DNA of 64,000 nt. Origin: Macrostomum lignano (Eukaryota). Of the stretch, positions 1 through 27,149 are shown piece after piece. Location: NCBI GenBank assembly GCA_002269645.1, contig NIVC01003267.1:1-64000 (forward strand), written 5' to 3'. A model generated the notes under the pieces. The model ran no database searches and was not told the origin of the DNA. It saw only the letters and a program-made list of their open reading frames with translations. Both the position numbers and the translations under genes were made by a program. The first letter of the stretch is position 1, and each line of letters opens with the position of its first letter.

Positions 1-588
1 GTTCTCGACGAATCAAAACGTCTGATGTACCAGTTCTTCTATGGCATGAAGCAGCAGTACAAGGATAAAATGAAACTCTTGTACACCGACACAGACAGTT
101 TTATTATGGAAATTCAAACAGAAGACATTTATCAGGACATGCTGCAGCAAAAGATTTGTTTGACTTGTCTGAGTATGATGAATCTTCAGGACACAGAATG
201 GCGATCAAGTGTTTGACGCACTAACAAGAAAGTGATTGGGAAAATGAAGGACGAGATTGCTGGTGACATAATCACTGAATTCATTGGTTGAGAGCAAAGT
301 CCTATTTTGTAAAATGTGAGTCGTCAGACCCAATAAAAAAATCAAAGGGAATTCCGAAACGCGTCGTTAGGAAGGAAATTAATGAAGCTGAATACAGAGA
401 CGCCTTGAATTGCAACAAAAAGACATCACATGAGTTCTCAAAGCTACAATCAAAAACCATATTATTCACACAATTCGCAAAAGAAGATTGGGCTGTCAGG
501 TGCAGATAACAAGAGATTCATTTTTGATGACAATATCAACAGTCTACCGTTCGGGCACTGGAGGTTAGGTTTAGGAGGTGGAGATTAA
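1..588 (+). pseudogene. pPolB: Protein-primed family B DNA polymerase, C-terminal part, with several single-base frameshifts
   Basis: Motifs LLYTDTDSF, NKKVIGKMKDE, LRAKSY, KKSKGI and DNKRFI..SLPFGH are spread over different frames. Confidence 0.9.
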
Positions 589-661
589 GCTTAGGAGGTT
601 GGGTTTAGGAGGTGGAGGTTGGGTTTAGGTTTAAGATAAAGTTTAATAAACCTCATAAAAA

Positions 662-1063
662 ATGACAACAAATAACTTTCTCGAAGATTTGGCTAACGAA
701 CTGGAAATCCCAAACTTTAGAGGAATATTTATGAGGGACACTCTGCCTGATTTTCCTCTAAGAAAGGAATGCGGCATCATGAACTTTGACACCACCGATA
801 AGCCAGGATCTCATTGGGTTTGCTGGGTGATTGATCCCGATCGCAAGCACAAGTGTTATTACTTCGATAGCTATGGGACGGCAGTACCAGAAGAGCTAAG
901 AAATTATATGAAGGGGAAAAATAATAAAAAAATTTATCGCTCAGACTTTATTCTCCAAGGTCTTAGCAGTGATATTTGCGGTGAGCTGTGCATGACTGTT
1001 TTGTATGCAATGACCAAAACACGAAAGACCTACAAGGAAATTATTCTTGGCTGTGTTTCATAG
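662..1063 (+). CDS. Adenain/Ulp1-like cysteine maturation protease
   Basis: GSHWVCW (His), YYFDSYG (Asp) and Q..SDICGELC (Gln/Cys) in the order typical of Polinton proteases; 133 aa, open. Confidence 0.9.
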   Translation: MTTNNFLEDLANELEIPNFRGIFMRDTLPDFPLRKECGIMNFDTTDKPGSHWVCWVIDPDRKHKCYYFDSYGTAVPEELRNYMKGKNNKKIYRSDFILQGLSSDICGELCMTVLYAMTKTRKTYKEIILGCVS

Positions 1064-1066
1064 GGT

Positions 1067-1814
1067 TCATTGTGCATTCCTCGTCGTCCTTCTTGCCGAA
1101 TTTCTTGCCGAATTTTTCGCCGACTTTCTTTCCACATAATGTTGAAAAACTTTCTCGAGTTCATTTTTCAGCTGACTCATGTCATCAGTACCGACCATGT
1201 TCAAGTTCATTCGAATTGATTGTTCATAAAGATCCTGAATGGTTTTGAACTCATCCTCTGAAATGAACTTATCCTCGATTGCCCTTGAAATGTACCCTAT
1301 GATTGATGTGTGCACCCTTTCTCTTTTACTTGCTTCTCCTGTAGCTGCTTTAGTTTTTTTCGCCTGTTTCGCGCTACTGCTCCAGTAATTGCTGAAATAA
1401 GTCCACATGCAGCACCTACTGAACCAAGTGGAATTGCGATTGGGGCTGTGATGGCTGGCAACACTGAGACAGCTGCAGCAGATCCAGATAGAACAGACAC
1501 AGATCCTAGAATCATATTGCTGTAGTCGAAAAATTTACAGTGGTTGTCATAGCGCCTAATTTTCTTTGTGTTGTGGAAAATATTTTTTCAAGATCATCGC
1601 GCATTTTTTGAATCTCCACCAGTCGAAACTGTTGAGAGTTACAAGTAATGACGGGGTAAAGTCGGTCTGAATATTGAGGTGCATTCAGATTCGATGCATT
1701 CAGATTCGGTGCCAGGTTTTGTGTGTTCGAATTCGGTGCCATTGAGTTTGGTGCTGTCGGTATTTTAGGTTCAGCATATTGAGACTGATCGTATAGAGAA
1801 TTTTGTTGGGCCAT
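1067..1814 (-). pseudogene. Conserved Polinton membrane-active protein (GasderminX-like in adintovirus nomenclature), split by two frameshifts
   Basis: ORFs 1512-1814, 1297-1515 and 1067-1408 join into LYP..QQFRLVEI, a hydrophobic Gly/Ala hairpin (GSVSVLSGSAAAVSVLPAITAPIAIPLGSVGAACGLI) and ISRAIEDKFISEDEFKTI, matching the recalled family pattern. Confidence 0.7.
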
Positions 1815-2724
1815 TTTTTTCTCTAGAAAAAATAAAAAAAATTATAAAACTATCCGGTTGAAAGATCTGTTTTCTTTTTGATAATTCCATCTGCACCGCC
1901 GGTTGTCTAGGCGGCTCTCTTGACGCCGGAGGATCGCGAGTCCAGCAGGCAGCGGCTGGCGGCTGACGTTTGAGAGCGTGCCGGATTACTCCGTCGGGGT
2001 CCAGAGCTCCTTCTACTCGATCTGTAGACATGACCGGACGAGCAGCAGATTCTGCTTCATCAATAGCAATATCACGAAGATTGAGTGTTCTCTCCAGACG
2101 ATCAAGCCTCCTTATTATTTTACCCCAAGAGCTATACATTCCGTTTAGATAGCTACTGTGTGATACATCGTTTCTCTCTAATGCATCAAGTCTTTCTTTG
2201 ATTCGATCATGCAACGATGTTGACTGAGTCATGAACTCTTCTAAAGTATTGACTTTACCTGTGTTGGTTGCGACGTTTTCTTTAATTCTATCATGCAACG
2301 CTGTTGACTGGTTCATGAACTCTTCTAAATTATTTACTTTAGCTGTGTTTGTGAAAACTCCTCCTTCGAGAATACGCATCCGTCTATCAGTGGAATTTCC
2401 CAGAAGATTAACTGATGATCTCAAGCCGTTGATTAGCGAGACTATCGAAGTTATTTCTGACCTTAGTTCATTAGTTGCGTTTAACAACGGCGCATAAAGC
2501 TTATCACTTTCAAACTTCTGCCTAGCTACTTTAAGCCTGAGATCTTCCATGTTTATTTGCAACTGGTGCATGGAGCGCTCTAGGGCTTTCAGTCTGTTTT
2601 TATTCAGTTTGATCTCTGGGATCTTTTCGTCGCTGTTGATATATCGCCTGTCAAGGATGGATATCTGAGCTGATGTAAGAGCGCTGTTGCCAGAAATGGA
2701 TTCACCTGCAAAGTTTATCGACAT
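1771..2724 (-). CDS. Coiled-coil Polinton protein of unknown function (possible fibre or tape-like protein)
   Basis: 317-aa ORF with heptad periodicity and an internal duplication NT(A/G)KVN.LEEFM.QST.LHDRIKE; A-rich context before the ATG. Confidence 0.7.
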   Translation of the reverse strand: MSINFAGESISGNSALTSAQISILDRRYINSDEKIPEIKLNKNRLKALERSMHQLQINMEDLRLKVARQKFESDKLYAPLLNATNELRSEITSIVSLINGLRSSVNLLGNSTDRRMRILEGGVFTNTAKVNNLEEFMNQSTALHDRIKENVATNTGKVNTLEEFMTQSTSLHDRIKERLDALERNDVSHSSYLNGMYSSWGKIIRRLDRLERTLNLRDIAIDEAESAARPVMSTDRVEGALDPDGVIRHALKRQPPAAACWTRDPPASREPPRQPAVQMELSKRKQIFQPDSFIIFFIFSREKNGPTKFSIRSVSIC

Positions 2725-2740
2725 CTTTTAATAGCAAATT

Positions 2741-3541
2741 TTAAATTACAGTTCTTTTTTCTTTGCTGATAATCACAAACTGGTAAGGCTGATTCCACTT
2801 GTCATAGCAAAGATTAACGAATTCCTCTTGTGAAATCTTTCTGCTTGAGTTTTTTGTTGGATTTATGAAATAGGCAGGCGCAATGACCTCATTGTAAAAT
2901 CTTTTTAGCCTGTCCTGTGGAATGGTTGGAAACAGGAGAATCAGATTGCAGTTCCCACGAATTGTTTTGTTCGGGAGCTCGAACCAATTCTGTGCAATGT
3001 AAATTACATTGCAATTGTTATGTCGCCCTCTTGTAAAATAGTTTTCTATCTGCTTCTGTGGGCCTGTCATACAATCATCAAAGACGATCAAATGCTTTCT
3101 CCCCTTTTCTAGCTCATCTGGTTGGGGTAGAAGTTTGGTCTTTGGATCAGCCTGTGGATCTCCATAGGTGAACACTTTAATGTTCTGCCATTTTTCATTG
3201 TCTTTGAGGTGCTTTGCATATTCAGCAGCTACAATTTCAGGGTTACTGGGAAGGCTCATTTGGTTATTAAAACATGCAATAATGTCCTCTTTGTGCAGTT
3301 TGTTTTGCAATCCAGAAATCAACATTTTATACTCATCTTGATACAGTGTGGGAGAGTAGATGTGCAGAGTGTCATAGTCGATAAAGCCAGGTCTAAGAAG
3401 CATGTTAAAGACTCTGAATGTTTTACCTGAACCTGATGAACCAACAACAATGCATCTGAAGTGACTCGGAATTGACTCGTGATGAGAAAACTTAATCTGA
3501 TTACGCGTCCAGTGAGGATTGAAGTCGTTTGAAAAGTCCAT
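2741..3541 (-). CDS. A32/FtsK-like genome-packaging ATPase
   Basis: Walker A GSSGSGKT, Walker B LIVFDD and the FTRGRH..CNVIYIAQ motif; 266 aa, open. Confidence 0.95.
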   Translation of the reverse strand: MDFSNDFNPHWTRNQIKFSHHESIPSHFRCIVVGSSGSGKTFRVFNMLLRPGFIDYDTLHIYSPTLYQDEYKMLISGLQNKLHKEDIIACFNNQMSLPSNPEIVAAEYAKHLKDNEKWQNIKVFTYGDPQADPKTKLLPQPDELEKGRKHLIVFDDCMTGPQKQIENYFTRGRHNNCNVIYIAQNWFELPNKTIRGNCNLILLFPTIPQDRLKRFYNEVIAPAYFINPTKNSSRKISQEEFVNLCYDKWNQPYQFVIISKEKRTVI

Positions 3542-3580
3542 TTTTTCTATGATGAAAAAAAAATTTAAATAATAAATAAT

Positions 3581-3727
3581 TTAGATGTGTCATTTCGGGA
3601 CTTAGATGTGTCATTTTGGGACTTAGATGTGTCATTTTGGTACTTAATTGTGTCATTTCGGGACTTAGATGTGTCATTTCGGGACTTAGATGTGTCATTT
3701 TGGGACTTAGATGTGTCATTTCGGGAC
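3581..3727 (+). repeat. Seven copies of a 21-bp tandem repeat upstream of the ATPase gene
   Basis: Unit TTAGATGTGTCATTT(C/T)GGGAC starts at 3581, 3602, 3623, 3644, 3665, 3686 and 3707. Confidence 0.97.
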
Positions 3728-3754
3728 TAGTCTTGTACCCTCGGAAAGTACCCT

Positions 3755-4144
3755 TTAGTCAAATTTGAAACCACTTCCTTTTTTAATGCTAGCCCTCATC
3801 TTCTCATAGACTGCAGGGTCCACACTGTCTGGATTTGGGGCCAATGGAGCCAGCGGGGCCAGTGGAGGCTGAATCTCTTGTTTAGGTGTTACAGTATCCT
3901 TTATCTTTTTGGCTGCTGTGGCTACACTGCCAGCCGCTTCGGCAACGTTCTTGATGTTCTCTTTGTTCTCTCCAATGACCTTAAAAATCTTGGCCCCCTG
4001 AGCGATCAAATCGGCAAGGCCATTCCCAGAGCGTTCTTTTCTTGGATAGTGGCCTGCAGGGAAAAGTCCAGATCCGCGTTTAATGAGATTAAGTTCCTCT
4101 TTGTCGTAGTATTTGTCCACGTCTTTCTCAAAAATAATCGGCAT
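3755..4144 (-). CDS. Small basic putative core protein with GxG motifs
   Basis: Likely start MPIIFEK at 4144 after an A-run; contains KRGSGL, RSGNGL and C-terminal KKGSGFKFD. Confidence 0.7.
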   Translation of the reverse strand: MPIIFEKDVDKYYDKEELNLIKRGSGLFPAGHYPRKERSGNGLADLIAQGAKIFKVIGENKENIKNVAEAAGSVATAAKKIKDTVTPKQEIQPPLAPLAPLAPNPDSVDPAVYEKMRASIKKGSGFKFD

Positions 4145-4160
4145 TTTTACTTGAAATAAA

Positions 4161-5378
4161 TTATTTTTTGTTGAACCGCGAAAGCAGAAGCTCTCTCGCC
4201 CGTTTGTCAATATACTTCTTTTCCATCATTTTGTCCAGGATGTTGACAAATTCTTTTCTATTTTCATCTTTCATTCCGGTCTTTGCTGCTCCTAGAAGAA
4301 CCGCTACTCGCTTGTAGATTTCAGAAATTCCTTTTCCTGTTGAGGGCGGTTGGTCTTGGGGTTGTGGAGTTGGTTGGGCTTGTAGCTGCTGGGGAGGTGA
4401 TGCAAAAGACTGCTCACTTTCAGAGATGGAACTGTCATGTGGTGCCTGTCTTTGTTGAGGTGTGAAAACTCTTTGCTTGATTCTGTTCATTCGATCTGGA
4501 GAGTGTTGTTCTAAGTGTTGCCAGGCATCTGGGTGATCATTTTTATATTTAGCTACTTGAGTCGGATCTGCATTTTCCAGTTGCCTGAGTACTTCTGTGA
4601 AATGTTGCTGCTGCTGTGGTTGTGGTTGTTGTTGCTGTTGTTGTTCTAGATATTTTATGACTTCCGCCTGATCTGGCAAATCGAACCATTGTTTAAAGTG
4701 CTTGTACTTTTTGAATTTAGTCAGGTTGACACCGCTATCGTACATGTGTTTCAGAACTTCTGGGACCTTTAGTATTTCTATATCTCTAACAAGAGAAAAA
4801 GTCACTAGATTTCTGTAGTTCTTTAGCTGCTTCTCGGAGATTTTCTCTTGGTTCTTGGTCATAAAAGTCAGTAAGGTGTCTGTGAAAGGAATTTTCATAG
4901 TTTCTGAGCCTTTGACAACAGAAATATTTTCCTTATTTATGTCGATATAATATTCCACTGGTTCATTATAAATGTTTTTTCTCCACATACTTATTCCAAA
5001 TACATATTTCCCATCATGTTCGACACGCTCTACTGGTCCAAAAATATTATCTGTCACTTTTAGTTGCTGTTGTGGTTGTGATTGTTGTTGTGATTGTTGT
5101 GGTTGCGGTTGTGTCTGTGGTTGCGGCTGTATCTGTGGTGCTTCTGGAATTTTGCCCAAAACCTTTTGCACTTGGGTTTCCTGTATGTCGTCGATAGTTT
5201 CTTTGACCTGATCAATATTTTTCTTAGCTTCTCCATACCCGGGTTTATGAAACTCTGTGGCTGCTTGGACAAACTCATTGTAGGATTGTTGCTCCTTATT
5301 TATTAGCCCGGTAACTCGTTTCTCTGCTTGTGCCAGCTTCTCCAATTCAGATATTCGCTGTGTACTTTTTCGCTTCAT
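4161..5378 (-). CDS. Gln-rich Polinton protein with a conserved C-terminal helical domain (putative core protein)
   Basis: 405 aa, open. C-terminus GKGISEIYKRVAVLLGAAKTG..EFVNILDKMMEKKYI resembles the recalled Maverick motif (L..A..AGN..NE...ILD.L....I). Confidence 0.75.
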   Translation of the reverse strand: MKRKSTQRISELEKLAQAEKRVTGLINKEQQSYNEFVQAATEFHKPGYGEAKKNIDQVKETIDDIQETQVQKVLGKIPEAPQIQPQPQTQPQPQQSQQQSQPQQQLKVTDNIFGPVERVEHDGKYVFGISMWRKNIYNEPVEYYIDINKENISVVKGSETMKIPFTDTLLTFMTKNQEKISEKQLKNYRNLVTFSLVRDIEILKVPEVLKHMYDSGVNLTKFKKYKHFKQWFDLPDQAEVIKYLEQQQQQQPQPQQQQHFTEVLRQLENADPTQVAKYKNDHPDAWQHLEQHSPDRMNRIKQRVFTPQQRQAPHDSSISESEQSFASPPQQLQAQPTPQPQDQPPSTGKGISEIYKRVAVLLGAAKTGMKDENRKEFVNILDKMMEKKYIDKRARELLLSRFNKK

Positions 5379-5408
5379 TTCTTATTTTATTTTATTTTTA
5401 GTTAAAAA

Positions 5409-6695
5409 ATGAACGACCCACTGACACCAGTTTTCTACAAAATTAACAAGCCTATTTTGAGTGATGATAGCACAATCAAAGCGACTCAGGTAAGAGTTCC
5501 CAGTCAGGAAAATCAGAATGAAACTAATCTTGGTCCTGGCCAAACACTGACATTCACATACAATGGATGTTCGTCTTTGGTTAGTGTGCACAGTCTTAAG
5601 AGCGGCTTCCATATGACATTTCAATTCAAGACAAAAGGTGGTGCGGATGCGGCTCGTGCTAACGTTGACAAGCATGATGTGGATGTGGCTCTGATCAGTA
5701 ACTTTTGGGCGTACATGTTCAAGGAGTTTAGTGTATCGAATGGGAGCACTGAGTTGGAGCGAATCGCCAACTTTGGAATTGTCTATGACGCTCATTGTTT
5801 GATCGAGAATCCTGATTTTATTCAATTGGGAAGTGGTGCGGGTTTTATCGCAGATGAAAAAGAAGGAGACATCAATGACAGTGGCTATAAAAAGAGGAAG
5901 AAGAGATACAACTATGCATTGCAAGGTGCTGATGATGCTGCTAAGAACCCGCTGTATCGGTCTGTTGATGTATTTGTACCATTGAGATTCATGAGTGGAT
6001 TCTGTAATACATTTAATCGACTGACTAGTAACTTTAGCTACACATTTAGACTGACTAGAGATGATCGCAGTAGAGTGTTGTGGACTGGGGCGGACCACAC
6101 TGGGATGGCTGTGAAGCTAACCGGAATCGAGCTGTATTTGGAAGTCATTGAGCCAAAGACTGCACTAAAAGCAGACTATCTTAAGGCAATAGAGAAGGAC
6201 ATTGATGTTGCATACACGGCCTACATGTGTCGAGATGAGCGAAACGAAACTAGAACAAACATCTGCATCAAAGAGGGATCATGCAGCAATCCAAGGTATA
6301 TCATTATTAATATGAGAAACCCAAATAGCATTATACGCTACATGCATGGAGACGTGCGGTCCATTCAGCATGAAATCAGTGATAATCTTTACCCTGCACT
6401 GCCACAAAATGGAGATTTCAGTCAGAACAAGATTAGCAAATTTTACAGCGAGTTAGTCGACTTGGCTGTGAAAGAGAACAATGGAATTGCTATCACTGCT
6501 CTTCAATATGGAACTCTATATCCGATGTTTGGCGCTGATGTGTCTGCCAGACAAATGCCTACTGATAACAGCCCTGTGAATATCGTGACTAACATTGAAA
6601 GGACTGCCGCAACACCCGTGGACCTGTACATTGTCTATGCATTTGAGAGGAAGGTGAAGCTTAACATGATCAACAATTCATCCAGTAAAGTTTAA
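5409..6695 (+). CDS. MCP: Major capsid protein (double jelly-roll)
   Basis: 428-aa beta-rich ORF with LYPALPQNGDF..KFY and LYPMFGADVS motifs typical of Polinton MCP; adjacent to the minor capsid gene. Confidence 0.85.
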   Translation: MNDPLTPVFYKINKPILSDDSTIKATQVRVPSQENQNETNLGPGQTLTFTYNGCSSLVSVHSLKSGFHMTFQFKTKGGADAARANVDKHDVDVALISNFWAYMFKEFSVSNGSTELERIANFGIVYDAHCLIENPDFIQLGSGAGFIADEKEGDINDSGYKKRKKRYNYALQGADDAAKNPLYRSVDVFVPLRFMSGFCNTFNRLTSNFSYTFRLTRDDRSRVLWTGADHTGMAVKLTGIELYLEVIEPKTALKADYLKAIEKDIDVAYTAYMCRDERNETRTNICIKEGSCSNPRYIIINMRNPNSIIRYMHGDVRSIQHEISDNLYPALPQNGDFSQNKISKFYSELVDLAVKENNGIAITALQYGTLYPMFGADVSARQMPTDNSPVNIVTNIERTAATPVDLYIVYAFERKVKLNMINNSSSKV

Positions 6696-6718
6696 ATATT
6701 TTTTTGTGGGTGAAAAAA

Positions 6719-7582
6719 ATGGAAGCTATAGCCGAAAGACTAAACAACATTGTTTCACACTCTAAGGAGAGCATTCCTATTACAATAACCGGGCGAATTA
6801 ATGACTCAAACGGGATGTTTGTTGAAAAATTAGAGCAGGCGATTCGCCTGGATCCTGGCGCTAATTACCATGTCTATCTTAACGACTTCACTGGTTGGTC
6901 AAACGTTCCCAATGTGATGGCAGCAAATAATAAGTTTTATTACAAATGGAAAGGTGCAGCAGCAGACCCTGTGGTATTCCATGTGAGCACGCAAAGTGTG
7001 GATACCTACAATAACTTTCTAGAAAATGTCTTTACTAAGAGAGGCCATTTTGAGACACCTGATGCGAGTAAGCCAGAGAAGAAACTGTTCCCTGTCAAAC
7101 TAACCTATGATCTCACTGTAATGAGAGTGGTCATGCAAGTTCACAAAGATGCGGAGGTTGAGTTTAAAGATGACACTTGGTATAGGGAACTGGGATTCGA
7201 GAAGAAAGTTTATAAGGCAGAATCCGCGGCGCGGACCGCCACTCAAGCATCGGGGACCGTTAAAATGGCCCGGGAAAATGTAAGCGGTTTGTTCTTAGCA
7301 CCCAATATTGCAGACATTGTAAAGGGTTTGAATATTCTAATCAGAAGCAATCTCAGTCTTGATTGGGTATTTAAGGGAAAGCGAACGAATATTTTGTACA
7401 ACATCTCCAACTCTGTTGCTGGAGGACAGATGGTGGTAGAGAAACCAAATCCAGTGAAAAGAGTTGTATTGAGTAATAAGGAGATTCACGAGATTGTGCT
7501 ACAGTTTGAGACTGAAGATGGGATGGGCGTTGATTTTAATGGGGAAGAGTTTGTATTGACGTTGATCATTGAGAGAATGTGA
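6719..7582 (+). CDS. Minor capsid protein (penton, single jelly-roll)
   Basis: ATG at 6719; C-terminal EIVLQFETEDGMGVDFNGEEFVLTLII fits the Polinton penton pattern D.dG..vDF.Ge...l.l.i. Confidence 0.8.
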   Translation: MEAIAERLNNIVSHSKESIPITITGRINDSNGMFVEKLEQAIRLDPGANYHVYLNDFTGWSNVPNVMAANNKFYYKWKGAAADPVVFHVSTQSVDTYNNFLENVFTKRGHFETPDASKPEKKLFPVKLTYDLTVMRVVMQVHKDAEVEFKDDTWYRELGFEKKVYKAESAARTATQASGTVKMARENVSGLFLAPNIADIVKGLNILIRSNLSLDWVFKGKRTNILYNISNSVAGGQMVVEKPNPVKRVVLSNKEIHEIVLQFETEDGMGVDFNGEEFVLTLIIERM

Positions 7583-7850
7583 TTTTAAAATAACTTAATA
7601 TTTTATTTCAGTTCTATTTCGAATTTTTAGTATATTTTTTCTAGTCATATTACTTATTAATAGGCAACCTCACGCTTTTTAGACTGACCAAGCATTATTT
7701 TTTTTTCTAACCAGTATTTAGTGAAAGGATTGAAAACACAAAAGAAATCGGATACAAAAGGATAGTCTGTGCTCAGTCTATTGTTTTATTATGTCAAAAG
7801 TTGGTTAACTTCGCAAGTATTCGCACATAACAAACACAAGTCTGTCATTG

Positions 7851-7997
7851 GTCTTTCTCAGAAAAAAAGCTTTTTTTGCACAGTTGAATTCGTGCGAATT
7901 CCTGTTAAGACAGGAAATAGCGCGAATCCAACTGCGCACTAGTCTTTCTCAGAAAAAATGCTATTTTGCACAGTTGAATTCGTGCGAATTCCTGTTA
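7851..7997. repeat. Duplicated palindromic module with GAATTC-GTGC-GAATTC cores, forming a 60-bp imperfect hairpin
   Basis: GCACAGTTGAATTCGTGCGAATTCCTGT at 7878-7905 and 7968-7995; a diverged inverted copy at 7910-7937. Confidence 0.9.
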
Positions 7998-8000
7998 TGC

Positions 8001-8158
8001 ACATGATTTTTACGAACGTTCGTGAAAATCATGTAACCACTGAGAGCCGCTTTATGCTGCACATGATTTTTACGAAAGTTCGTAAAAATCATGTAACCAC
8101 TGAGAGCCGCTTTATGCTGCACATGATTTTTACGAACGTTCGTGAAAATCATGTAACC
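8001..8158. repeat. Three 60-bp tandem units, each with a 34-bp near-perfect palindrome; a fourth degenerate unit at 8398-8462
   Basis: ACATGATTTTTACGAA(C/A)GTTCGT(G/A)AAAATCATGT at 8001, 8061 and 8121; identical 26-bp linkers AACCACTGAGAGCCGCTTTATGCTGC. Confidence 0.97.
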
Positions 8159-8282
8159 AGTGGGAATCGAACCATGCGGGGCAGACTGAGACCGGTTTCG
8201 GGCTTGTTTGCCCTCGTCAGTCAGTCATAGCCACACGAGGTCGGCTCCACCTCTAGCCAGCTGAGTGGAACTGCTATTTATA
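8145..8282 (-). promoter_or_regulatory. Putative Pol III transcription unit around the hammerhead (TATA box, weak A box, perfect B box, T4 terminator)
   Basis: Minus strand: TATAAATA at 8282-8275, A-box-like TGGCTAGAGGTGG at 8259-8247, GGTTCGATTCC at 8173-8163 and TTTT at 8148-8145. Confidence 0.55.
8184..8226 (-). ncRNA. Type I hammerhead ribozyme with a minimal palindromic stem III
   Basis: Minus strand reads GACUGA-CUGACGA-GGGC-AAACAA-GCCC-GAA-ACCGGU-C-UCAGUC: complete catalytic core, perfect 6-bp stem I, perfect 4-bp stem II and a GUC cleavage triplet. Confidence 0.92.
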
Positions 8283-8798
8283 CGCCCTTGCACCAAGTCC
8301 TTGCCTTGCACATGGCGACATTTTCTAGTCCACCATGTGAGGAATTCGCGCCATGTTCAAATAGCTTTACTATCAGTAAGCTATCGCTTACAAATACGAG
8401 CCGCTTTATGCTGCACATGATTTTTACGAACGTTCGTCTAATTAATGTAACCAATAAGAGCCACTTTCGTGCGCTTTAAAAGATATATTTGCTTCAACCA
8501 ATAGATACAGCTTAAAGGACTACTGTAGACGAAAGAAACTTGCCAGTACAAATAAGAGTATATTACGAGTATTTTAACACACAGAATACGCTGAAAAATG
8601 TGAAGTAAAAGCCATCACTGTTTAACGTAGAGAATAATCATTCATAGTCAGTACTTCGTCTTCATCAGTTCAAGACCTCCGTTGTGGTCGCTTCGTCTTC
8701 TTCTATCTATGCCTAAAAAATTGTTTATTCGACTTGTATTGTTTGTTTGTACAAACTTTCTTTCAGAATTTGTTACAAAAAAAATGTTATGTATTTAC

Positions 8799-9652
8799 TT
8801 TCTTCATCTTCTCTTCATCTTTGTCTTCTTCTTCGGCCGCTTCGTCTTCTTCTATGCCTAAAAAATTGTTTATTCGACTTGTATTGTTTGTTTGTACAAA
8901 CTTTCTTTCAGAATTTGTAACAAAAATGTTATGTACTTACTTTCTTCATACCAACACCTGACATCCTTCTCATGTTGTTCATCCAGGGAAATACCCTCGA
9001 TTTGCATCTTCAATAAGTCCGCAAAGCGTTCATCGATTTTCGCCTTCTCTTCAATCGCCGATTTGTAGCGAAGCAGGGTTCCCATTGTGTAACTTGAAAA
9101 TATTAGACCTGGGTACATGATACAGAGAGAGTAAAATTTGTCGTAGTCTCCCACTGTTCGCTTGCTGATGTTGAAAGTGGTGGCGAGCTCTTCCACATTC
9201 ATTTTGTGCTTGTAGACCAAAACTTGAATTAAGCGCCCCTGCTCAAACTGCATCATGGCCTTCGCAGTTGACAGGTTCTCGATAGAATAGGTCAGCTTCT
9301 TAAACCTCGCTTCCAAGTCTACCTTTGTCGTTCCATTCAAATTCATGGCGACCAAGTTGAGACCTTCGGAAATTGCACCCAGAGACAACATTACACCACG
9401 ACTCTCATTCTCTTCCAGCTTCGCGTATATCCTCGCAATAACTCTCTCTCGCTCGCTCTCTTCCTTTTTCTTGGGAAGCGCCCTCTTCTTATCCGGAATA
9501 CCTTCAAGCTTTTCCAAGCTCTCCTGAAACCTTACCAACTCTTCTTCTTTCCAGCTGCTCAGTCTGCTTCCCATTGCCGACCTTTCTTTAGATGACAGCG
9601 TGACCGCCAGTTCAGCAATCGTTGCAATTCTTGTCTCTTTTGACATGGCCAT
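8799..9652 (-). CDS. Helix-turn-helix protein, probably spliced at its 3' end to an acidic tail exon
   Basis: Likely start MAMSKET at 9652; HTH-like MNVEELATTFNISKRTVGDY at 9202-9143; GTAAGT..TTTTTTAG intron at 8940-8858 followed by IEEDEAAEEEDKDEE. Unspliced, the ORF stops at 8870. Confidence 0.65.
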
Positions 9653-9782
9653 GATAAAAAGTATTCCTTTTATTGAAGAAAGTTTCGGTTTGACTTGCGG
9701 GGCGAGGTCCGGTGTGAATCGGTTGTTTTTATACCTTTGGTGGTATACGGTAGTACTCGGAAATCCCTGAATATTATCTATC

Positions 9783-9955
9783 GGATATCCAGAATATTCT
9801 AGAATATTCCCTTCTAGAAGGGAAACCCGCATGGCATGGGTTTTATTTTTAGATCTTACGTCTGCACTCTACAGGGTACAACCTTGTAATTGCCCATGCC
9901 ATGTGGGTTTTATTTTTAGATCTTGCGTCTGCACTCTACAGGGTACAACCTTGTA
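9783..9955. promoter_or_regulatory. Overlapping perfect palindromes plus a 52-bp direct duplication upstream of the HTH gene
   Basis: GGATATCC at 9783-9790, GAATATTCTAGAATATTC at 9792-9809 and TTCCCTTCTAGAAGGGAA at 9807-9824; duplicated 9837-9888 and 9904-9955. Confidence 0.6.
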
Positions 9956-10027
9956 CGAGCGTAGTTGCCAACTACAACTGTCTTATGACTTCAGCAAAGT
10001 TATAATAGCTGTTAAAATCATTAATGA

Positions 10028-10210
10028 CTATACTCCGTATTTAAGAAACCAGTGTCTTTGGAGAGCTAGATTAATATTAGGGACATTGATATGAACGTCG
10101 GGCCAATATTTTCTCATGTATTCGCTGCATTCAAGTTTGCATCGGTACTTGGATTTGTACAATGGATGAGGCTGAGTATAATAGGAACCTGGAGAGACAA
10201 CTGGAAACAT
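10028..10210 (-). CDS. Small 60-aa Polinton ORF of unknown function
   Basis: ATG preceded by the same A-run seen before other viral genes; aromatic- and basic-rich composition. Confidence 0.45.
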   Translation of the reverse strand: MFPVVSPGSYYTQPHPLYKSKYRCKLECSEYMRKYWPDVHINVPNINLALQRHWFLKYGV

Positions 10211-10379
10211 TTTTTTATTAAGAATTTAATTTTTTTTCAAAGGGTAAGGACCCTGGGTTAGGGGGTTTAAAGTCTTTGGGATCTGGTTTCGTGTTGCGAA
10301 TTGAATGTGGGGAGAAGAATGCAGATTATTTTCAGATTGTTTCTGGGTGGATGTTAGTGGATTATGTCAGTGTCAATGA

Positions 10380-10632
10380 GCATAACAGGTGTTAGTGGAC
10401 ACCTGTTATGCACTGATTCTGTCAGGGATAATATGGATGGATTTAATACGATTATGTTCGACGTTTTCGGAGCAAGTGCGACCCCTCCACTTTTTCATGA
10501 TTCTGTCGGGGATAATATGGATGGATTTAATGGGATTATGGAGGACGTTTTGTGAGCGAGTGCGACCCCCCTTTTTTTCTGATTCTGTCAGGGATAATAT
10601 GGATGGATTTAGGTGGATTATGGAGGACGTGA
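10380..10632. repeat. 13-bp-stem hairpin followed by three direct repeats of about 83 bp
   Basis: GCATAACAGGTGT-TAGTGG-ACACCTGTTATGC at 10380-10411; TGATTCTGTC(A/G)GGGATAATATGGATGGATTTA at 10414, 10498 and 10580. Confidence 0.9.
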
Positions 10633-13214
10633 AAAATTTTGTCCCAAAAGCCCCCTCATGCCTTCTACTCACGAGAGGTCTCTTTAGAATGAGACGCATT
10701 AAACCTTTGGTGGTACACATTCCGACGTTGAGAGAGAAGTCAGGACGTTGTACAAGCCTGCTTGAGCGTTTGCGCAAAGGACTGATGTGTATTCGTAAGA
10801 CGGTTCGAATTCCGTCTAATCGTATATTTGTGTTAATAAAAAGGAGCGGAAATAATTCGTTATCGTAGGAGACCTTGTCTCGCTCCGCTCGTTCGTTAGT
10901 TAATTTCATTTTCCCTCGTGCGCCCAGCTCTTTAGTAACTGTCTGGGTCTTCGAGAATTATGACCATACGCTCGTAGATAGTTCAATCACATGCGCAAAA
11001 GTTCATAGTTAAAATCCATATCAACAACAGTGTTCCATAGCGCTGTGTTATACAGCAGTCTTTTCGTCTGCGTACGCATCCATGTGCTTTTGCTATTTTA
11101 GCCGAAAAATTCGGCTCGTGTTTTGTCGAGTCCAGATTCGTCTCTTGACGGTATGTATTCATTACCGCCATCATCCATATTAAGAAAAATAATGAAGAAC
11201 ATTGCTGAAAAAACTGTGCATTCTTTTGTGATTAGTAAATAAAAAAAAAATACAAGTTTTTTTCATTTCTGTGGCTTTCATTAAAGCTAATACACTTGCA
11301 AGTTTCTCTTCCTCTCGTTTTTCAAATATATTTTATTCAGACTAATTAAATATTAAAATTTTTACCAAGGACGACTTAAGTCGTCCTTGATTTTTACATT
11401 ATTATCAATTATAATCATTGATGGTAACTTGACTTGACTCTTTCTGAAGTCAAATCAAGTCGCACTGACGGTTTTGCATCAAGTTTAAGAATTATCTTAT
11501 TGAATTTGAAGTAGTGCCTTTTTGATTTTTAGGTATTTCTCTTTTTTTCTGCTTACCTAATGAACCTCTCACTCCAGAGTTGCTCTGTTACATTTTTAAA
11601 AAATCTTTTTTTCAGTTTTCGCCTTCACTTCATTGTAAATTTTCACTTTTTGTTGAAGCAAGCAAGTAGCAATAGTTTTAAACTATTCATCTAATCATGT
11701 TTGTTCATTAGGCCTCCTATGTAAGAGGCTAAGGGTGCAGTCAATTTTAGCAAATTTTAATTTTGGCAAAAGCATATTATACTCATAGTTAGGGATTGCA
11801 AAATCCCATTTTTTGCAATCCTGGGATCCTGGGATTTAATCTCAGAATTTGGCCAATCCCAGGATTGAATCAGAAAATCAGAAAAATACAGATTCTTAAG
11901 CTTCTTGGTTGAAATTTGAAGGCAAAATATGCATTAAACATATTTTTGCTTCCATTTTTTATTGTTATGGACATAGTTGCCACACCTGCACTATTTTAGC
12001 ACTACTGTACTATTTTGTTTCAGCTGCACTACTGCACTATTATCTTTAAAATGCTGTCAATTCTATACTAAATGAGTTTTATAGTTAAATAGACTAAGTC
12101 AACCATGTTTCATTGTCATTGGACAACCTTTGTGGCTGCATCCTGACATGCTTTGTCCAAGAAGACATTGTTAATGAGACCAACTGTCTGTCAGACCTTG
12201 CTAATTATGCCAAGGAATGCTCTAATCAGTTGGATAATGCAAGTCTAATGATTGGTAGCATGAGACTATTGACAGACTATTGCCAATGAGACTATATGAG
12301 ACTATATGAGACCTATGAGACTATTGACAGACTATTGCCAATTGATTGTTACAATTGATTTTACAAAAGCATTTGCAATTTGTATTGTTAGTTAGTGCAA
12401 AGGCAGATCATATCTGCTGCTGCAGAACATATCCTCCAAGCTCTTTGCTTTGTTAGCCCTGACTAGGCCTACTTACTCAGAGAGGACTTTAACTTTGGTT
12501 GTGTCTATGAACTGTGTCAATGGTTGCCAAATCTATTAGCACCATCATCACAGTTGATGAGCCTAATGAGCTGCATCTTGAAGTCACCAGGTTCTGTGCC
12601 TCAAACTTGGAGCTCAAAAGGTCAAATCCTGAGAAGTTCTGGTTTTTAAAGTGAATATCCAACAACTTAACAAAGCAGTGGAACAAGCTTTCTGAGTTAA
12701 TGCTCAACTCTCTGCTCACTATTAAGACTTGGTGTAAGGCAAATTTGGCCACCACATACAGTCACAATTGAACCAAATAAACCTAATTGCCAGCAGCTTT
12801 TAAAGACTAAAGTAAAGCAGCTGATTGCGCTCAATTAGAACAATAGCAGCAGGAGGAGGATTTAGTGATGCAGCAGCAGACTGATGACGAGATTCAAAGA
12901 AAGGCACAAGAAGAACAACAGCAGCAAGAGGAGGATTTAGTGACACAGCAGCAGACTGTTAAAGAGATGTGAAGGAAGGTGCAAGAAATTCTGGCAGCTA
13001 CATCAAAGGTGGAAGCTGCATTACAAAAATGGCTTGTGACAGAGCATGTCCAGTCAGCCTAGGGGAGTCATTAGTCAGATTGTCATATTCCATTTTGCCA
13101 TATCAGATGACGAAGTGACTAGAAGCAAAGTAGCTTGAAAAATAATATGACAAAGTGACCAAATATTTAGTTATGCTAGATACTTTGTCATCAACCAATC
13201 AATCTGTGTGGGAG

Positions 13215-13512
13215 CATACATGTGCAACCTCCAAAATTCGGTCAGCCGTGCGACTTAGTTTTAACAAAAATGCGACGTAGTTTTTGGCCAAAAATGCGAC
13301 TTACATATAAAAAAACCCGAAAGCAAAATTAATGCAACTTTGGGTAAACGGCAGGAGTAACTATGACTGTTTTATTAAGCTAAAATGCCTCGTCAGCTAC
13401 TTAGTACTACTACTCGGGTTATTTTTTGGGTGGGCATTTTTGCGACTTCCTTGATTGGCCGCCAAATCGGTCGGCCGGATCGGCCGACTCGGCCGACTGT
13501 TGCGCATGTATG
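13215..13512 (+). mobile_element. MITE with a 28S rRNA-like core, copy 1
   Basis: TIR CATACATG(T/C)GCAAC, 8-bp TSD TGTGGGAG; 28S-like segment at 13342-13405. Confidence 0.92.
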
Positions 13513-14367
13513 TGTGGGAGTTAAGTTAGTGTAAACTATTTTTTGTTTATTAACTATAAGCTGCAGCAAGCAGAACCAATTGATTGACAGGTTTTATCAA
13601 TCAAGATGACAAAATGACTGGGATCATTAGGATTCCAAGTAAATATGTTTGATTGCCACATTAATTCACTTGAAGTTGGAACTAATATGATTGGTAGATG
13701 ACAAAATGACTCTCTACAGATAATGCATGCTAATTAAGATGATGAAGTGACCATAGTCAAGGTGAGCACCCCAGACACCTAGATGAGAAAATGACTAGAA
13801 CCCCTAGGGGTGGTAGCAAAATTGCGCAAATTGAATGTGCCACTGCCACTGGACCCTCTAATAATTGTACAAACTAATAATTCATTTGCTAGTGCTTATA
13901 ATAGAATGTTTGTTAATAGACTTAAACTTTGCTGATCCTATTATACATGCAAAAATTGCTTAAACTACAGTAAAATTGAATTAGCGCGAAAACTAAGAAA
14001 CACTATTCTACTTTGTTTTAAATAGCAAATTATAAATGGTAAATAATTTTTGTTATAACTTAGCCTTTCTGAATCCTATATATGTGAGTGAATTTTGCCC
14101 AAATAAAAGTAACCTTTTTTTTGCTCTTGAAATATTTGTGCGCTATAACATTGGTTCATTCTATATTCTCAGATAAACTTTGAAATCTTATTGAGTTAGT
14201 TATTTTAAGGAAAGAGGGAGCAACAGTGCTCAGAAAATTGCTAAGAGAAGGGATTGAGAGATATACAAGGGAAATTCAGAGAGTTGTGCCGTGACCCTCT
14301 AATCCTGGTAAAAGCCCGACTAGGACAATCTGATAAGTTCATGTGCCAGTACTTGACTGCTCAGGCC

Positions 14368-14728
14368 ATACATAAGATGCTACCAGACTAATACATAAGA
14401 CGCTACCAGACTAATACATAAGACGCTACCAGACTAATACATAAGACGCTACCAGACTAATACATAAGACGCTACCAGACTAATACATAAGACGCTACCA
14501 GACTAATACATAAGATGCTACCAGACTAATACATAAGACGCTACCAGACTAATACATAAGACGCTACCAGACTAATACATAAGACGCTACCAGACTAATA
14601 CATAAGATGCTACCAGACTAATACATAAGATGCTACCAGACTAATACATAAGATGCTACCAGACTAATACATAAGATGCTACCAGACTAATACATAAGAT
14701 GCTACCAGACTAATACATAAAATGCTAC
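14368..14728 (+). repeat. 23-bp minisatellite, about 15 copies
   Basis: Unit ATACATAAGA(C/T)GCTACCAGACTA. Confidence 0.95.
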
Positions 14729-16014: not shown

Positions 16015-16290
16015 CAATGGCTAGAGTTTTGGTATTGGAACCCATTATTTAATGGCTATGGATTTGGTAGTAGTATTCTAATACTGCAATTGATGGGTAT
16101 AATATAGCAGAAACATTTTGCTTTTTAATAGGTGGTTAATATTAAGATTTTATTCAGGATAAGATCACAACAAAATGATAGATTCAAAACATGTTCAAAG
16201 ACTTCATTAGTAGATAACTGCCTATAGAAGACTGCTAGATCCATAGCCATTATAAAATGGGTTCCAGTGTTGGAACTCTAGTCATTACCC
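16015..16290. mobile_element. Degenerate MITE-like inverted repeat
   Basis: ATGGCTAGAGTT..GGAACCCATT..AATGGCTATGGAT is mirrored by ATCCATAGCCATT..AATGGGTTCC..AACTCTAGTCAT. Confidence 0.55.
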
Positions 16291-18913: not shown

Positions 18914-19154
18914 TAATTTTTTATATCTGCGAGCTTGCTGCCATCTGTGACAACCGCTGCTGATCAATCACTAGCTTTACATTCACCTGCTCAGTACGAT
19001 TAGTTCGCAAATTCGAATTCTTGAAGCAGTGAATAGAGTAAGTTTATTAGGCCGGTAGTCCGACCAGTTTTTCGCGAGTTGTGTAAGTTTCCCGCGGTTT
19101 TCATCAATTTATTTCTAGTTAACAGCCAAAACTAATTAACTATAAGAGAACCCC

Positions 19155-27089: not shown

Positions 27090-27148
27090 ACTGCGCACGG
27101 AATCGAACCCGGGATACTTCGGCGCGAAAGCCAGATCGACGCGTTAAT
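27090..27148 (-). other. tRNA-derived fragment with a B box (possible SINE head relic), truncated by a MITE
   Basis: CCCGGGTTCGATTCC on the minus strand; no complete cloverleaf. Confidence 0.35.
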
Positions 27149-27149
27149 C

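What the first reader, a model, noticed from the sequence alone, without database searches (positions are those of the whole stretch)
8145..8282. Hammerhead ribozyme in a putative Pol III small-RNA gene of a Polinton/adintovirus
Seen in sequence: the minus strand has a complete type I hammerhead (stem I GACUGA/UCAGUC, core CUGACGA, stem II GGGC-AAACAA-GCCC, GAA, palindromic stem III ACCGGU, cleavage after GUC between 8190 and 8189). Upstream lie TATAAATA and weak A-box candidates; downstream lie a perfect B box GGTTCGATTCC and a T4 run. The predicted transcript is about 105-120 nt, and cleavage would release a 3' product of about 44 nt. Established knowledge: minimal type I hammerheads with palindromic stem III occur in Penelope-like elements and cleave as dimers; Schistosoma Sm-alpha repeats combine a CUGACGA hammerhead with Pol III boxes; adenoviruses, relatives of Polintons, express Pol III VA RNAs. 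Inference: this could be a self-cleaving VA-RNA analogue of a Polinton virus. I know of no described example. The alternative is a host SINE or retrozyme that inserted here.
Basis: partly seen in the sequence, partly recalled or inferred. Interest (0 to 1): 0.92.

Follow-up and report, generated by a model that had tools for sequence, protein, structure and literature searches.

The report
Hammerhead ribozyme cassette inside flatworm Polinton
A complete self-cleaving hammerhead ribozyme motif, flanked by RNA polymerase III-like signals, sits at the same place in every copy I could sample of one virus-like Polinton transposon family in the flatworm Macrostomum lignano. This is a setting not described before for this ribozyme, but whether it is transcribed or useful to the element is untested.

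Summary
The minus strand at 8238-8172 carries a type I hammerhead with all core nucleotides. It has a 6-bp helix I extended by an internal loop and an 8-bp outer helix, a 4-bp helix II with a 6-nt loop, and a loop-less palindromic helix III (ACCGGU). The predicted cleavage site lies after C8190. Rfam's HH9 model scores 32.7 bits, below its cut-off of 52. A strict descriptor found no hit in 1000 simulated windows.

The window is Macrostomum lignano contig NIVC01003267.1. Bases 1-10669 are the right part of a Polinton-like element holding protease, A32 ATPase, double-jelly-roll capsid and HTH genes.

The 229-bp cassette (8390-8162) lies in the convergent intergenic region. It sits between units of a palindromic 60-nt repeat array. 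It is present, 99.6-100% identical, in all four sister copies examined (three independent insertion sites). It is absent from a divergent Polinton family that keeps the array.

So it is a lineage-specific passenger or acquisition of the element, not a private insertion.

Pol III transcription is plausible but unproven: the B box is exact and T4 lies 14 nt after it, yet the A box is weak, the TATA box is misplaced and no tRNA fold exists. The VA-RNA analogy is speculative. No copies were found outside Polintons, but the host genome could not be scanned.

The parts
8172..8238 (-). Type I hammerhead ribozyme motif. It comprises the outer helix (8238-8231 with 8179-8172), internal loop 1 (CUAU 8230-8227 / UGCC 8183-8180), helix I (8226-8221 with 8189-8184), core CUGACGA (8220-8214), helix II with a 6-nt loop (8213-8200), GAA (8199-8197), and the loop-less palindromic helix III ACCGGU (8196-8191).
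   Evidence: Sequence. HH9 model 32.7 bits, E 4.4e-6. Strict descriptor 0 of 1000 simulations. Pair probabilities of helices I, II and the outer helix are mostly 0.9-1.0.
8189..8190 (-). Predicted self-cleavage site, 3' of C17 (8190), before U1.1 (8189).
   Evidence: Position relative to the conserved core. Cleavage itself is not shown.
8163..8173 (-). Exact B-box-like motif GGTTCGATTCC. Its first two G's are the last pairs of the outer helix.
   Evidence: two matches in the window, 0.07 expected. In L006/L008 the first G is T.
8145..8148 (-). First run of four T on this strand after the TATA box, 14 nt after the B box. It is a possible Pol III terminator and lies inside the first palindromic array unit.
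   Evidence: The next runs are T5 at 8088 and T4 at 8028.
8250..8267 (-). Weak A-box / tRNA D-arm-like motif CACTCAGCTGGCTAGAGG.
   Evidence: Read. By my own count it matches about 8 of 11 positions of the A-box consensus used, which has no exact match here. No tRNA by ARAGORN.
8275..8282 (-). TATAAATA box upstream of the ribozyme.
   Evidence: Sequence. Function not tested.
8162..8390 (-). The 229-bp cassette that interrupts the 60-nt repeat array. It holds the upstream region with the TATA box, the A-box-like motif, the hammerhead and the B box.
   Evidence: Unit spacing is 60, 60, then 294 nt. The cassette is 99.6-100% identical in L004, L006, L007 and L008 and occurs nowhere else in the DNA held.
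7984..8161 (.). Three tandem 60-nt units, each with a 34-nt near-perfect palindrome (ACATGATTTTTACGAAC / GTTCGT.AAAATCATGT).
   Evidence: Unit number varies among sister copies.
8398..8467 (.). Fourth, degenerate unit of the same array, on the other side of the cassette.
   Evidence: 89% identical to the reference unit.
8870..9832 (-). Open reading frame of the HTH / 'DNA-binding' protein family (NCBI BOX15_Mlig029811g1). It lies upstream of the cassette on the same strand. AATAAA signals are at 8874 and 8729.
5409..6695 (+). Double-jelly-roll major capsid protein gene.
   Evidence: Pfam DJR-like domain, E 1.3e-4. Homologues carry PF21738.
6704..7582 (+). Gene next to the capsid gene, a putative minor capsid (penton) protein. 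It converges on the cassette region.
   Evidence: Conserved position after the capsid gene in L001, L002 and L130. No family match, so the name is inferred.
2741..3541 (-). A32-like packaging ATPase gene.
   Evidence: Pfam Pox_A32, 27.4 bits against a cut-off of 22.8.
662..1063 (+). Adenovirus-type cysteine protease reading frame.
   Evidence: Pfam Peptidase_C5, 21.9 bits against a cut-off of 21.3.
1..10669 (.). Right-hand part of the Polinton-like element. The left side is cut by the end of contig NIVC01003267.1. The right terminus is at 10669.
   Evidence: All four copies become alignable at the same base and have unrelated flanks (three sites).

Best explanation
The feature is a roughly 230-bp non-coding cassette that belongs to one Polinton (Maverick) family of the flatworm Macrostomum lignano.

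Location. It sits in the 1.3-kb region where the capsid genes (plus strand) and an HTH-protein gene (minus strand) converge. It is lodged between units of a palindromic 60-nt repeat array that is older than the cassette.

Ribozyme. The minus strand encodes a type I hammerhead with a fully canonical core and HH9-like geometry: a 6-bp helix I with an internal loop, and a 4-bp helix II with a 6-nt A-rich loop. Helix III is the loop-less palindrome ACCGGU. One molecule therefore cannot close it. Two transcripts must pair through it, as in the dimeric newt hammerhead, to cleave after C8190.

Inferred mechanism.
- The cassette is a small tRNA-related Pol III transcription unit (exact B box, T4 14 nt later, no earlier T4, weak A box, nearby TATA box).
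- It would make an RNA of about 105-130 nt.
- That RNA would cleave in a concentration-dependent way into a 5' piece ending in a cyclic phosphate and a 3' piece of about 45 nt.

Inferred origin. The ancestor of this Polinton lineage acquired a hammerhead-bearing, SINE-like small-RNA module once, of the kind known from schistosome Sm-alpha elements. It has since been copied along with the element.

Shown: the motif, its significance, the Polinton context, its presence in all sampled sister copies, and its absence from a divergent family.

Inferred: transcription, the polymerase, dimeric cleavage and origin. Benefit to the element is unknown.
For: Motif and significance.

HH9-like geometry. A metagenomic hammerhead (L077) has the same helix III and loop 1 (CUAU) and a similar loop 2, but different, still complementary helices I and II.

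Polinton context:
- Protease, A32 ATPase and capsid protein.
- Capsid homologues.
- A sharp shared terminus at 10669 with three different flanks.

The cassette is integral to the family. It is identical or has one change in L004, L006, L007 and L008 at the same position.

It is lineage-specific. The distant paralogous element L005 has an HTH protein 52% identical and a pPolB fragment. It keeps two inverted 36-nt units right after the HTH gene but has no hammerhead.

Pol III signals:
- The exact B box is improbable by chance so close to the ribozyme.
- The first T4 follows it by 14 nt.

Precedent in flatworms: Sm-alpha and Sj-alpha are tRNA-derived SINE-like elements with hammerheads (PMC2770079). 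Dimeric action with an unstable helix III and an extended helix I is documented for newt hammerheads (PMC6155905, PMC7229834).
Against: - No expression data could be consulted.
- The A box is weak, there is no tRNA cloverleaf, and one search listed no tRNA match.
- The TATA box is too close to the A-box-like motif for both to act in one promoter.
- The T4 is part of every array unit, so it would be there anyway.
- The B-box region shares 12 of 20 bases with the corresponding part of an array unit (my comparison of the sequences). The right edge of the cassette is therefore fuzzy.
- There is no poly(A) tail and no target-site duplication, so classical retroposition is not visible.
- No copy outside Polintons was seen, so the donor is hypothetical. 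Only about 145 kb of host DNA was available.
- Sister copies differ by only about 1% in this region. The absence of changes in the cassette is therefore uninformative, and no covariation exists.
- The minimum-energy monomer fold uses an alternative pairing (-27.5 against -24.1 kcal/mol for the active scaffold).
- The 129-nt rod is only modestly more stable than shuffles (z = -1.75).
- In L006/L008 three uncompensated changes fall in the B box, outer helix and 3' flank.
Confidence: 0.5

Rival explanations
1. Inert passenger. A hammerhead-bearing fragment (a SINE, retrozyme or other host repeat) entered the ancestor of this Polinton family by insertion or recombination. It is simply replicated with the element. 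It is not transcribed as its own unit and does not matter to the element.
For: In animal genomes hammerheads are overwhelmingly parts of retroelements (PMC7229834, PMC6155905). The cassette is absent from a divergent Polinton family. Sister copies are too similar for conservation to indicate selection. L006/L008 carry three uncompensated changes at the B box, outer helix and 3' flank, and a 4.2-kb non-coding insertion about 400 bp away. A single loop-less-helix-III hammerhead is a poor self-cleaver on its own.
Against: The core, both helices and the tertiary-loop geometry are all intact. The exact B box sits next to the ribozyme. No related copy was found elsewhere in about 145 kb of host DNA or in the ORF-based look-ups. 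There is no poly(A) tail or target duplication to mark a retroposed insert.
Confidence: 0.25
2. The hammerhead processes a Pol II transcript. One possibility is that it cuts read-through transcripts of the HTH gene downstream of its poly(A) signals, acting as a co-transcriptional cleavage or termination device before transcription collides with the converging capsid genes. The other is that it removes the capped leader of a TATA-driven minus-strand RNA that runs through the hairpin array antisense to the capsid genes.
For: The ribozyme is on the same strand as the HTH gene and downstream of it. It lies about 490-640 nt after the AATAAA signals at 8874 and 8729. The region is a convergent 3'-3' junction. 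The HTH gene is the only gene of the element called in the public annotation of the four copies. A strong TATA box lies about 45 nt upstream of the ribozyme.
Against: This model leaves the exact B box unexplained. A ribozyme that needs two molecules to pair is ill suited to co-transcriptional cleavage. The divergent family does without it. No transcript data were available.
Confidence: 0.15
3. The cassette is a functional, self-cleaving analogue of adenovirus VA RNA: an abundant Pol III RNA that the Polinton uses against host defences or to regulate itself.
For: The same Pol III-like signals as above. The predicted 129-nt RNA folds into an imperfect rod whose ends pair. Adenoviruses are related to Polintons and make Pol III VA RNAs (established knowledge). 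No such RNA is described in the adintovirus paper, which contains neither 'VA RNA' nor 'polymerase III'.
Against: The Rfam E-value-mode search of 7600-8800 listed no VA match. The rod is barely more stable than shuffles. There is no evidence of expression, abundance or function. The cassette is restricted to one lineage.
Confidence: 0.07
4. Chance resemblance: the hammerhead motif is a random occurrence.
For: The match is below Rfam's gathering score. The loose core pattern alone is found in 11 of 100 shuffles.
Against: With the observed helix lengths there were 0 hits in 1000 simulations. The full-length alignment to HH9 has E = 4.4e-6. All invariant core nucleotides are present.
Confidence: 0.01

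Closest known systems
Sm-alpha / Sj-alpha SINE-like retroposons of schistosomes (flatworms)
   Same: Same phylum. They combine a type I hammerhead with tRNA-derived Pol III promoter elements in a short non-coding unit (PMC2770079).
   Different: Sm-alpha is a very high-copy dispersed or tandem repeat whose tRNA part is recognised as tRNA-Gln by tRNA finders. Here there is one copy per Polinton and no cloverleaf. The ribozyme lies between the A-box-like motif and the B box. No copies were seen outside the DNA element. Sequence comparison was not possible because no Sm-alpha sequence was held by the tools.
Newt/salamander satellite 2 'extended' hammerheads and axolotl non-LTR retrozymes
   Same: Type I hammerhead with an internally looped extension of helix I, specific loop 2, an unstable helix III, and much better cleavage as a dimer (PMC6155905, PMC7229834).
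   Different: Those occur as tandem 170-400 bp repeats that yield unit-length linear and circular RNAs. Here there is a single ribozyme per locus, so no monomer can be excised and any dimer must form between two transcripts.
Minimal hammerheads of Penelope-like elements and Terminons
   Same: Type I, helix III missing or very short, thought to work in pairs (PMC6155905, PMC7229834).
   Different: PLE hammerheads lack the loop 1 / loop 2 tertiary contacts and lie in PLE terminal repeats next to a reverse transcriptase. Here the loops are present and no reverse transcriptase is nearby.
Rfam Hammerhead_HH9 (RF02275)
   Same: Best-scoring family. Helix I, loop 1, helix II and loop 2 have the same lengths, and the alignment runs end to end.
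   Different: The score of 32.7 bits is below the cut-off of 52, because the helix III loop is entirely absent. The genomic setting also differs.
Metagenomic hammerhead in L077 (Ga0157569_1055819)
   Same: Same helix III (ACCGGU) and the same loop 1 5' side (CUAU). Loop 2 is similar (CAACAA against AAACAA). It scores 38.6 bits on HH9.
   Different: Helices I and II differ in sequence but remain paired. The flanks are unrelated and lack a B box. The organism is unknown.
Viral Pol III non-coding RNAs (adenovirus VA RNA; Pol III-driven BLV miRNA cluster)
   Same: A small structured RNA gene with internal Pol III promoter elements inside a virus or virus-like genome (PMC3643585, PMC12498455). This is an analogy only.
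   Different: None of these contains a ribozyme. No VA match was listed. Pol III transcription here is unproven.

Membership tests
Hammerhead ribozyme, type I | Conserved catalytic core (CUGANGA ... GAA ... A15.1-U16.1, H17) | tested here: met
   All core positions are present at 8220-8190(-).
Hammerhead ribozyme, type I | Helices I and II flanking the core, with loop 1 / loop 2 geometry for tertiary contact | tested here: met
   6-bp helix I plus an internal loop and an 8-bp outer helix. 4-bp helix II plus a 6-nt loop. It aligns without indels to HH9 in these parts.
Hammerhead ribozyme, type I | A closed helix III within one molecule | tested here: not met
   ACCGGU has no loop. It can only form as a 6-bp intermolecular duplex (-8.3 kcal/mol).
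Hammerhead ribozyme, type I | Score at or above the curated Rfam threshold | tested here: not met
   32.7 bits against 52 for RF02275. Nothing was reported at gathering thresholds.
Hammerhead ribozyme, type I | Self-cleavage activity | not testable with these tools
   No biochemical or RNA-end data were available.
Hammerhead ribozyme, type I | Compensatory base changes among relatives | tested here: inconclusive
   The four copies are identical in the ribozyme. L077 keeps the pairing with other bases, but I selected it with a filter that required pairing.
Pol III type 2 (tRNA-like) gene | B box | tested here: met
   Exact GGTTCGATTCC at 8173-8163. 0.07 expected per window.
Pol III type 2 (tRNA-like) gene | A box at the right distance from the start | tested here: inconclusive
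   There is only a D-arm-like match of about 8 of 11 positions at 8267-8257. The spacing from A box to B box is about 95 nt. There is no exact consensus match.
Pol III type 2 (tRNA-like) gene | T-run terminator shortly after the B-box end, and none before it | tested here: met
   The first T4 is at 8148-8145. However, it is part of the array unit.
Pol III type 2 (tRNA-like) gene | Pol III-dependent transcript | not testable with these tools
   No expression or occupancy data were available.
tRNA-derived SINE (Sm-alpha type) | Recognisable tRNA-related head | tested here: not met
   ARAGORN finds nothing at default settings, with or without introns. Only junk calls appear at lowered thresholds. 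One search listed no tRNA match.
tRNA-derived SINE (Sm-alpha type) | Many dispersed copies with tails and target duplications | tested here: inconclusive
   There are no copies outside the Polinton in about 145 kb of host DNA and no tail or duplication at the cassette edges. The whole genome could not be scanned.
Metazoan non-LTR retrozyme | Tandem 170-400 bp repeats, each with a hammerhead | tested here: not met
   There is one hammerhead per locus. The only tandem repeat is the 60-nt array, which has no ribozyme.
Penelope-like element hammerhead | Location in a PLE terminal repeat next to an RT / GIY-YIG gene | tested here: not met
   No reverse transcriptase domain appears in the neighbouring reading frames. 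The neighbours are capsid and HTH genes.
Adenovirus VA RNA | Match to the VA RNA family (sequence and structure) | tested here: not met
   The Rfam E-value-mode search (up to E = 10) of 7600-8800 listed no VA match.
Polinton / Maverick (adintovirus-like) | Morphogenesis module: double-jelly-roll capsid protein, A32-type ATPase, adenovirus-type protease | tested here: met
   Pfam matches are at or near the cut-offs. Capsid homologues carry PF21738.
Polinton / Maverick (adintovirus-like) | [quoted passage not shown] | not testable with these tools
   The element is cut by the contig end at window base 1. The 1.3 kb further held in L007 has no match. The distant relative L005 has a pPolB fragment.
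Polinton / Maverick (adintovirus-like) | Defined termini and multiple insertion sites | tested here: met
   A sharp shared terminus at window 10669, with three unrelated flanks. The other terminus and the target duplication were not seen.

The most novel reading that the evidence does not exclude
A virus-like Polinton encodes its own Pol III-transcribed small RNA whose hammerhead cleaves only when two transcripts pair through the palindromic helix III. The RNA would then act as a dosage-dependent self-cleaving regulator, or as a VA-RNA-like counter-defence molecule. It would be the first ribozyme-containing non-coding RNA gene of a eukaryotic DNA virus lineage.
Probability: 0.1. Interest if true: 0.85.

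Novelty: new variant of a known kind. Interest (0 to 1): 0.45.

Why it matters
Animal hammerheads are known almost only from retroelements (Penelope-like elements, retrozymes, schistosome SINE-like repeats) and a few domesticated intronic copies. The library searches found no paper linking a hammerhead or a Pol III RNA gene to Polintons, Mavericks or adintoviruses.

If the cassette is expressed, it would show that these DNA virus-like elements can carry small non-coding RNA genes. It would also give a natural case of a hammerhead whose activity depends on the pairing of two transcripts.

If it is inert, it still documents capture and spread of a ribozyme module by a DNA element. It also provides a clean marker for one Polinton lineage in a model flatworm.

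Tried and rejected
- Rfam at curated thresholds found nothing in the window.
- No tRNA was found, even with introns allowed. At lowered thresholds ARAGORN gives scattered junk calls, so I rejected the tRNA-like fold.
- The sub-threshold microRNA-family matches over 7998-8167 and in L005 only reflect long hairpins formed by the palindromic units. I did not treat them as family membership.
- Pattern scans of the viral contig collection found nothing for the ribozyme or the palindrome. Protein-anchored scans of the same collection also found nothing.
- The metagenome scan with the exact helix II found nothing. The general scan returned mostly chance matches, and 10 loci passed my pairing filter.
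- Metagenomic and Logan relatives of the capsid gene (71-77% identical) sit on contigs too short or differently arranged to show the region. In L001 a coiled-coil gene follows the penton gene.
- I used open frames across the cassette as protein queries to find other copies. There were no hits.
- Exact look-ups of the window's own proteins were not on record.
- Conservation among sister copies is useless as a test of selection, because background divergence is only about 1%.
- The inverted repeats at 13205-13515 and around 56-61 kb are not Polinton terminal repeats. They are copies of a short interspersed element.
- The HTH protein has no solved relative and no convincing family beyond weak HTH matches.
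- The Sm-alpha paper (PMC108972) is not held.
Full report
**1. What is in the sequence**

Read on the minus strand, 8238-8172 spells a complete type I hammerhead.
- Outer helix: 8238-8231 pairs with 8179-8172.
- Internal loop: CUAU (8230-8227) opposite UGCC (8183-8180).
- Helix I: GACUGA (8226-8221) pairs with UCAGUC (8189-8184).
- Core: CUGACGA (8220-8214).
- Helix II: GGGC/GCCC closed by AAACAA (8213-8200).
- GAA (8199-8197).
- Helix III: ACCGGU (8196-8191).
- C17 at 8190.

Around it lie TATAAATA (8282-8275), a D-arm-like weak A box (8267-8250), an exact B box (8173-8163) and the first T4 (8148-8145).

**2. Is it more than chance?**

- Rfam at curated thresholds reports nothing in the window.
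- In E-value mode the only ribozyme match is Hammerhead_HH9: 32.7 bits against a cut-off of 52, E = 4.4e-6. It aligns from the first to the last model position, and the only gap is the missing helix III loop.
- The bare core pattern is common (11 of 100 shuffles).
- A descriptor with relaxed helix lengths hit 9 of 200 simulated windows. With the observed helix lengths it hit 0 of 1000.
- The exact B box is expected 0.07 times per window and occurs twice, once directly abutting the ribozyme.
- The motif is therefore real. Catalysis is not shown.

**3. Folding**

- Helices I and II and the outer helix have high pair probabilities.
- The active scaffold (-24.1 kcal/mol) competes with an alternative fold (-27.5 kcal/mol).
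- ACCGGU cannot close on itself. As a self-duplex it contributes -8.3 kcal/mol. Activity therefore requires two molecules, as documented for newt hammerheads (PMC6155905, PMC7229834).
- A 129-nt RNA from 8273 to 8145 folds into an imperfect rod. It is only modestly better than shuffles (z = -1.75), while the antisense strand gives z = -0.42.

**4. Where the window comes from**

- The reading frame at 8870-9832(-) is 100% identical to a Macrostomum lignano protein.
- The locus fetched for that protein is identical to window 1-19700. The window is therefore the first 64 kb of contig NIVC01003267.1 of assembly GCA_002269645.1.

**5. The element**

- Window 1-10669 holds an adenovirus-type protease frame, an A32-like ATPase, a double-jelly-roll capsid gene and its neighbour (a putative penton gene). 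It also holds the HTH-type gene.
- The element is cut by the contig end, so no polymerase or integrase can be seen.
- A distant relative in the same genome (L005) has a pPolB fragment next to homologues of two of the window's genes.
- Four sister copies become alignable at exactly the same base, window 10669. Their flanks are unrelated, except that L006 and L008 share flanks and so are a duplicated locus. This gives three independent insertion sites and a defined right terminus.
- I did not audit the reading frames for breaks.

**6. The cassette in its setting**

- The ribozyme lies in the 1.29-kb gap between the stop of the penton-like gene (7582, plus strand) and the stop of the HTH gene (8870, minus strand).
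- The gap is full of repeats: a 145-bp duplication of the HTH gene's 3' end, two 90-bp-spaced repeats, and a 60-nt array whose units each hold a 34-nt palindrome.
- Array units are spaced 60, 60 and then 294 nt apart. About 229-234 nt (8390-8162) therefore interrupt the array.
- That segment is the cassette: upstream region, TATA box, A-box-like motif, hammerhead and B box.
- Its edges show no poly(A) tail and no target duplication.
- The B-box region shares 12 of 20 bases with the corresponding part of an array unit, so the right edge is not sharp.

**7. Sister and distant copies**

- L007 is 98.8-99.4% identical to the window. L006/L008 are about 96% identical over this end and 89% over the capsid region.
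- All of them carry the cassette at the same place. It is 100% or 99.6% identical. The single change is the first G of the B box.
- Background divergence in this part is only about 1%, so the lack of changes is not evidence of selection, and there is no covariation.
- The divergent element L005 (HTH protein 52% identical) has two inverted 36-nt units with the same ends (ACATGA.TTTT ... AAAA.TCATGT) directly after the HTH gene. It has no hammerhead.
- The array is therefore old, and the cassette is a later, lineage-specific acquisition that now travels with the element.

**8. Copies elsewhere**

- None of the roughly 145 kb of M. lignano DNA held contains another hammerhead or any piece of the cassette.
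- Viral and metagenome collections have no copy.
- Open frames across the cassette have no protein-database relatives.
- The host genome itself could not be scanned, so a high-copy host repeat is not excluded.
- The general metagenome scan shows that hammerheads with the same palindromic helix III exist in other, unknown eukaryotes. One (L077) shares the loop sequences and the HH9-like geometry but has unrelated flanks.

**9. Which polymerase?**

For Pol III:
- The exact B box.
- A T4 14 nt after it, which is tRNA-gene geometry.
- No earlier T4 on this strand.

Against Pol III:
- The A box is weak.
- There is no cloverleaf.
- The TATA box ends 7 nt before the A-box-like motif, so the two promoter models conflict.
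- The T4 is part of every array unit.

A Pol II reading is also possible. The ribozyme is downstream of, and on the same strand as, the HTH gene, about 490-640 nt after its AATAAA signals. That gene is the only one called in the public annotation of these copies.

**10. Comparison with known systems**

- The nearest functional analogue is the schistosome Sm-alpha/Sj-alpha family: flatworm, tRNA-derived Pol III unit plus hammerhead (PMC2770079).
- The ribozyme's own architecture is closest to the extended, dimer-acting hammerheads of newt satellite 2 and axolotl retrozymes, and to Rfam HH9 (PMC6155905, PMC7229834).
- It is not a PLE-type minimal hammerhead, because the loops are present and no reverse transcriptase is nearby.
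- It is not a retrozyme, because it is not tandem.
- It is not a VA RNA, because one search listed no VA match.
- The library holds no paper that links a hammerhead or a Pol III RNA to Polintons, Mavericks or adintoviruses.

**11. Verdict**

- The cassette is an integral, lineage-specific part of this Polinton family.
- Its reading as a Pol III small-RNA gene is plausible but unproven, and the VA-RNA analogy is speculative.
- I rate it a new variant of a known kind (a hammerhead small-RNA module in a new carrier), of moderate interest.
- Public RNA data and a whole-genome copy census would decide between the explanations.

Noticed in passing
window 7984-8173 and 8398-8467; L005 10942-11043: A palindromic or inverted repeat array with conserved ends (ACATGA.TTTT ... 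AAAA.TCATGT) follows the HTH-protein gene in two Polinton families whose HTH proteins are only 52% identical. The inner sequence differs but stays self-complementary. It could be binding sites for the adjacent HTH protein or an RNA hairpin. Unit number varies among sister copies.
   Followed up: partly
window 8648-9700 (gene range in L004 10001-11053); L006, L007 and L008 at 10001 onward: In the public annotation of all four Polinton copies, the HTH gene is the only gene of the element that is called. The capsid, ATPase and protease frames are not annotated.
   Followed up: no
window 8706-8781 and 8851-8926: A 145-bp tandem duplication of the 3' end of the HTH gene, including its AATAAA signal. 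The sister copy L007 lacks about 141 bp here.
   Followed up: partly
L006 11982-16232 and the matching part of L008 (window equivalent 7763/7767): A 4.2-kb non-coding insertion with a 23-nt minisatellite of about 108 units, about 400 bp from the ribozyme. It occurs in the duplicated locus L006/L008 only.
   Followed up: partly
window 13205-13515, 56296-56563, 59755-60064, 60878-61164; L006 1039-1336: A roughly 310-bp interspersed repeat with short terminal inverted repeats (MITE-like), 84-94% identical among copies. It is not part of the Polinton.
   Followed up: partly
window 10413-10630: An 84-nt tandem repeat (2.6 units) just inside the right terminus of the Polinton (10669). This terminal region is the most divergent part among sister copies.
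   Followed up: partly
window 27099-27109 (-): A second exact GGTTCGATTCC in a G+C-rich region next to 21-nt and 59-nt minisatellites. There is no hammerhead and no tRNA call nearby. It may be a tRNA-derived relic.
   Followed up: partly
window 19159-23316, 26100-27450, 33774-37207, 46305-47206, 49050-49376, 52075-53616: The host DNA beyond the element is unusually rich in long G+C-rich minisatellites, for example 34 nt x 45, 23 nt x 40 and 35 nt x 25. It alternates with A+T-rich stretches.
   Followed up: no
window 17525-18913 (+): The nearest annotated host gene is a 7-transmembrane receptor (Pfam 7tm_1), about 6.9 kb beyond the Polinton terminus.
   Followed up: no
L001 2915-3571 versus window 1771-2724 (-): In a metagenomic relative (capsid protein 73% identical) a coiled-coil protein gene follows the penton gene. 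Its homologue in the window lies on the other side of the ATPase gene, so gene order is rearranged between relatives.
   Followed up: partly
L050 998-1159, L062, L080, L117 (metagenome Ga0116226): A family of hammerheads with the same ACCGGU helix III recurs on several contigs of one metagenome. In L050 it appears as two copies on opposite strands about 130 nt apart.
   Followed up: no
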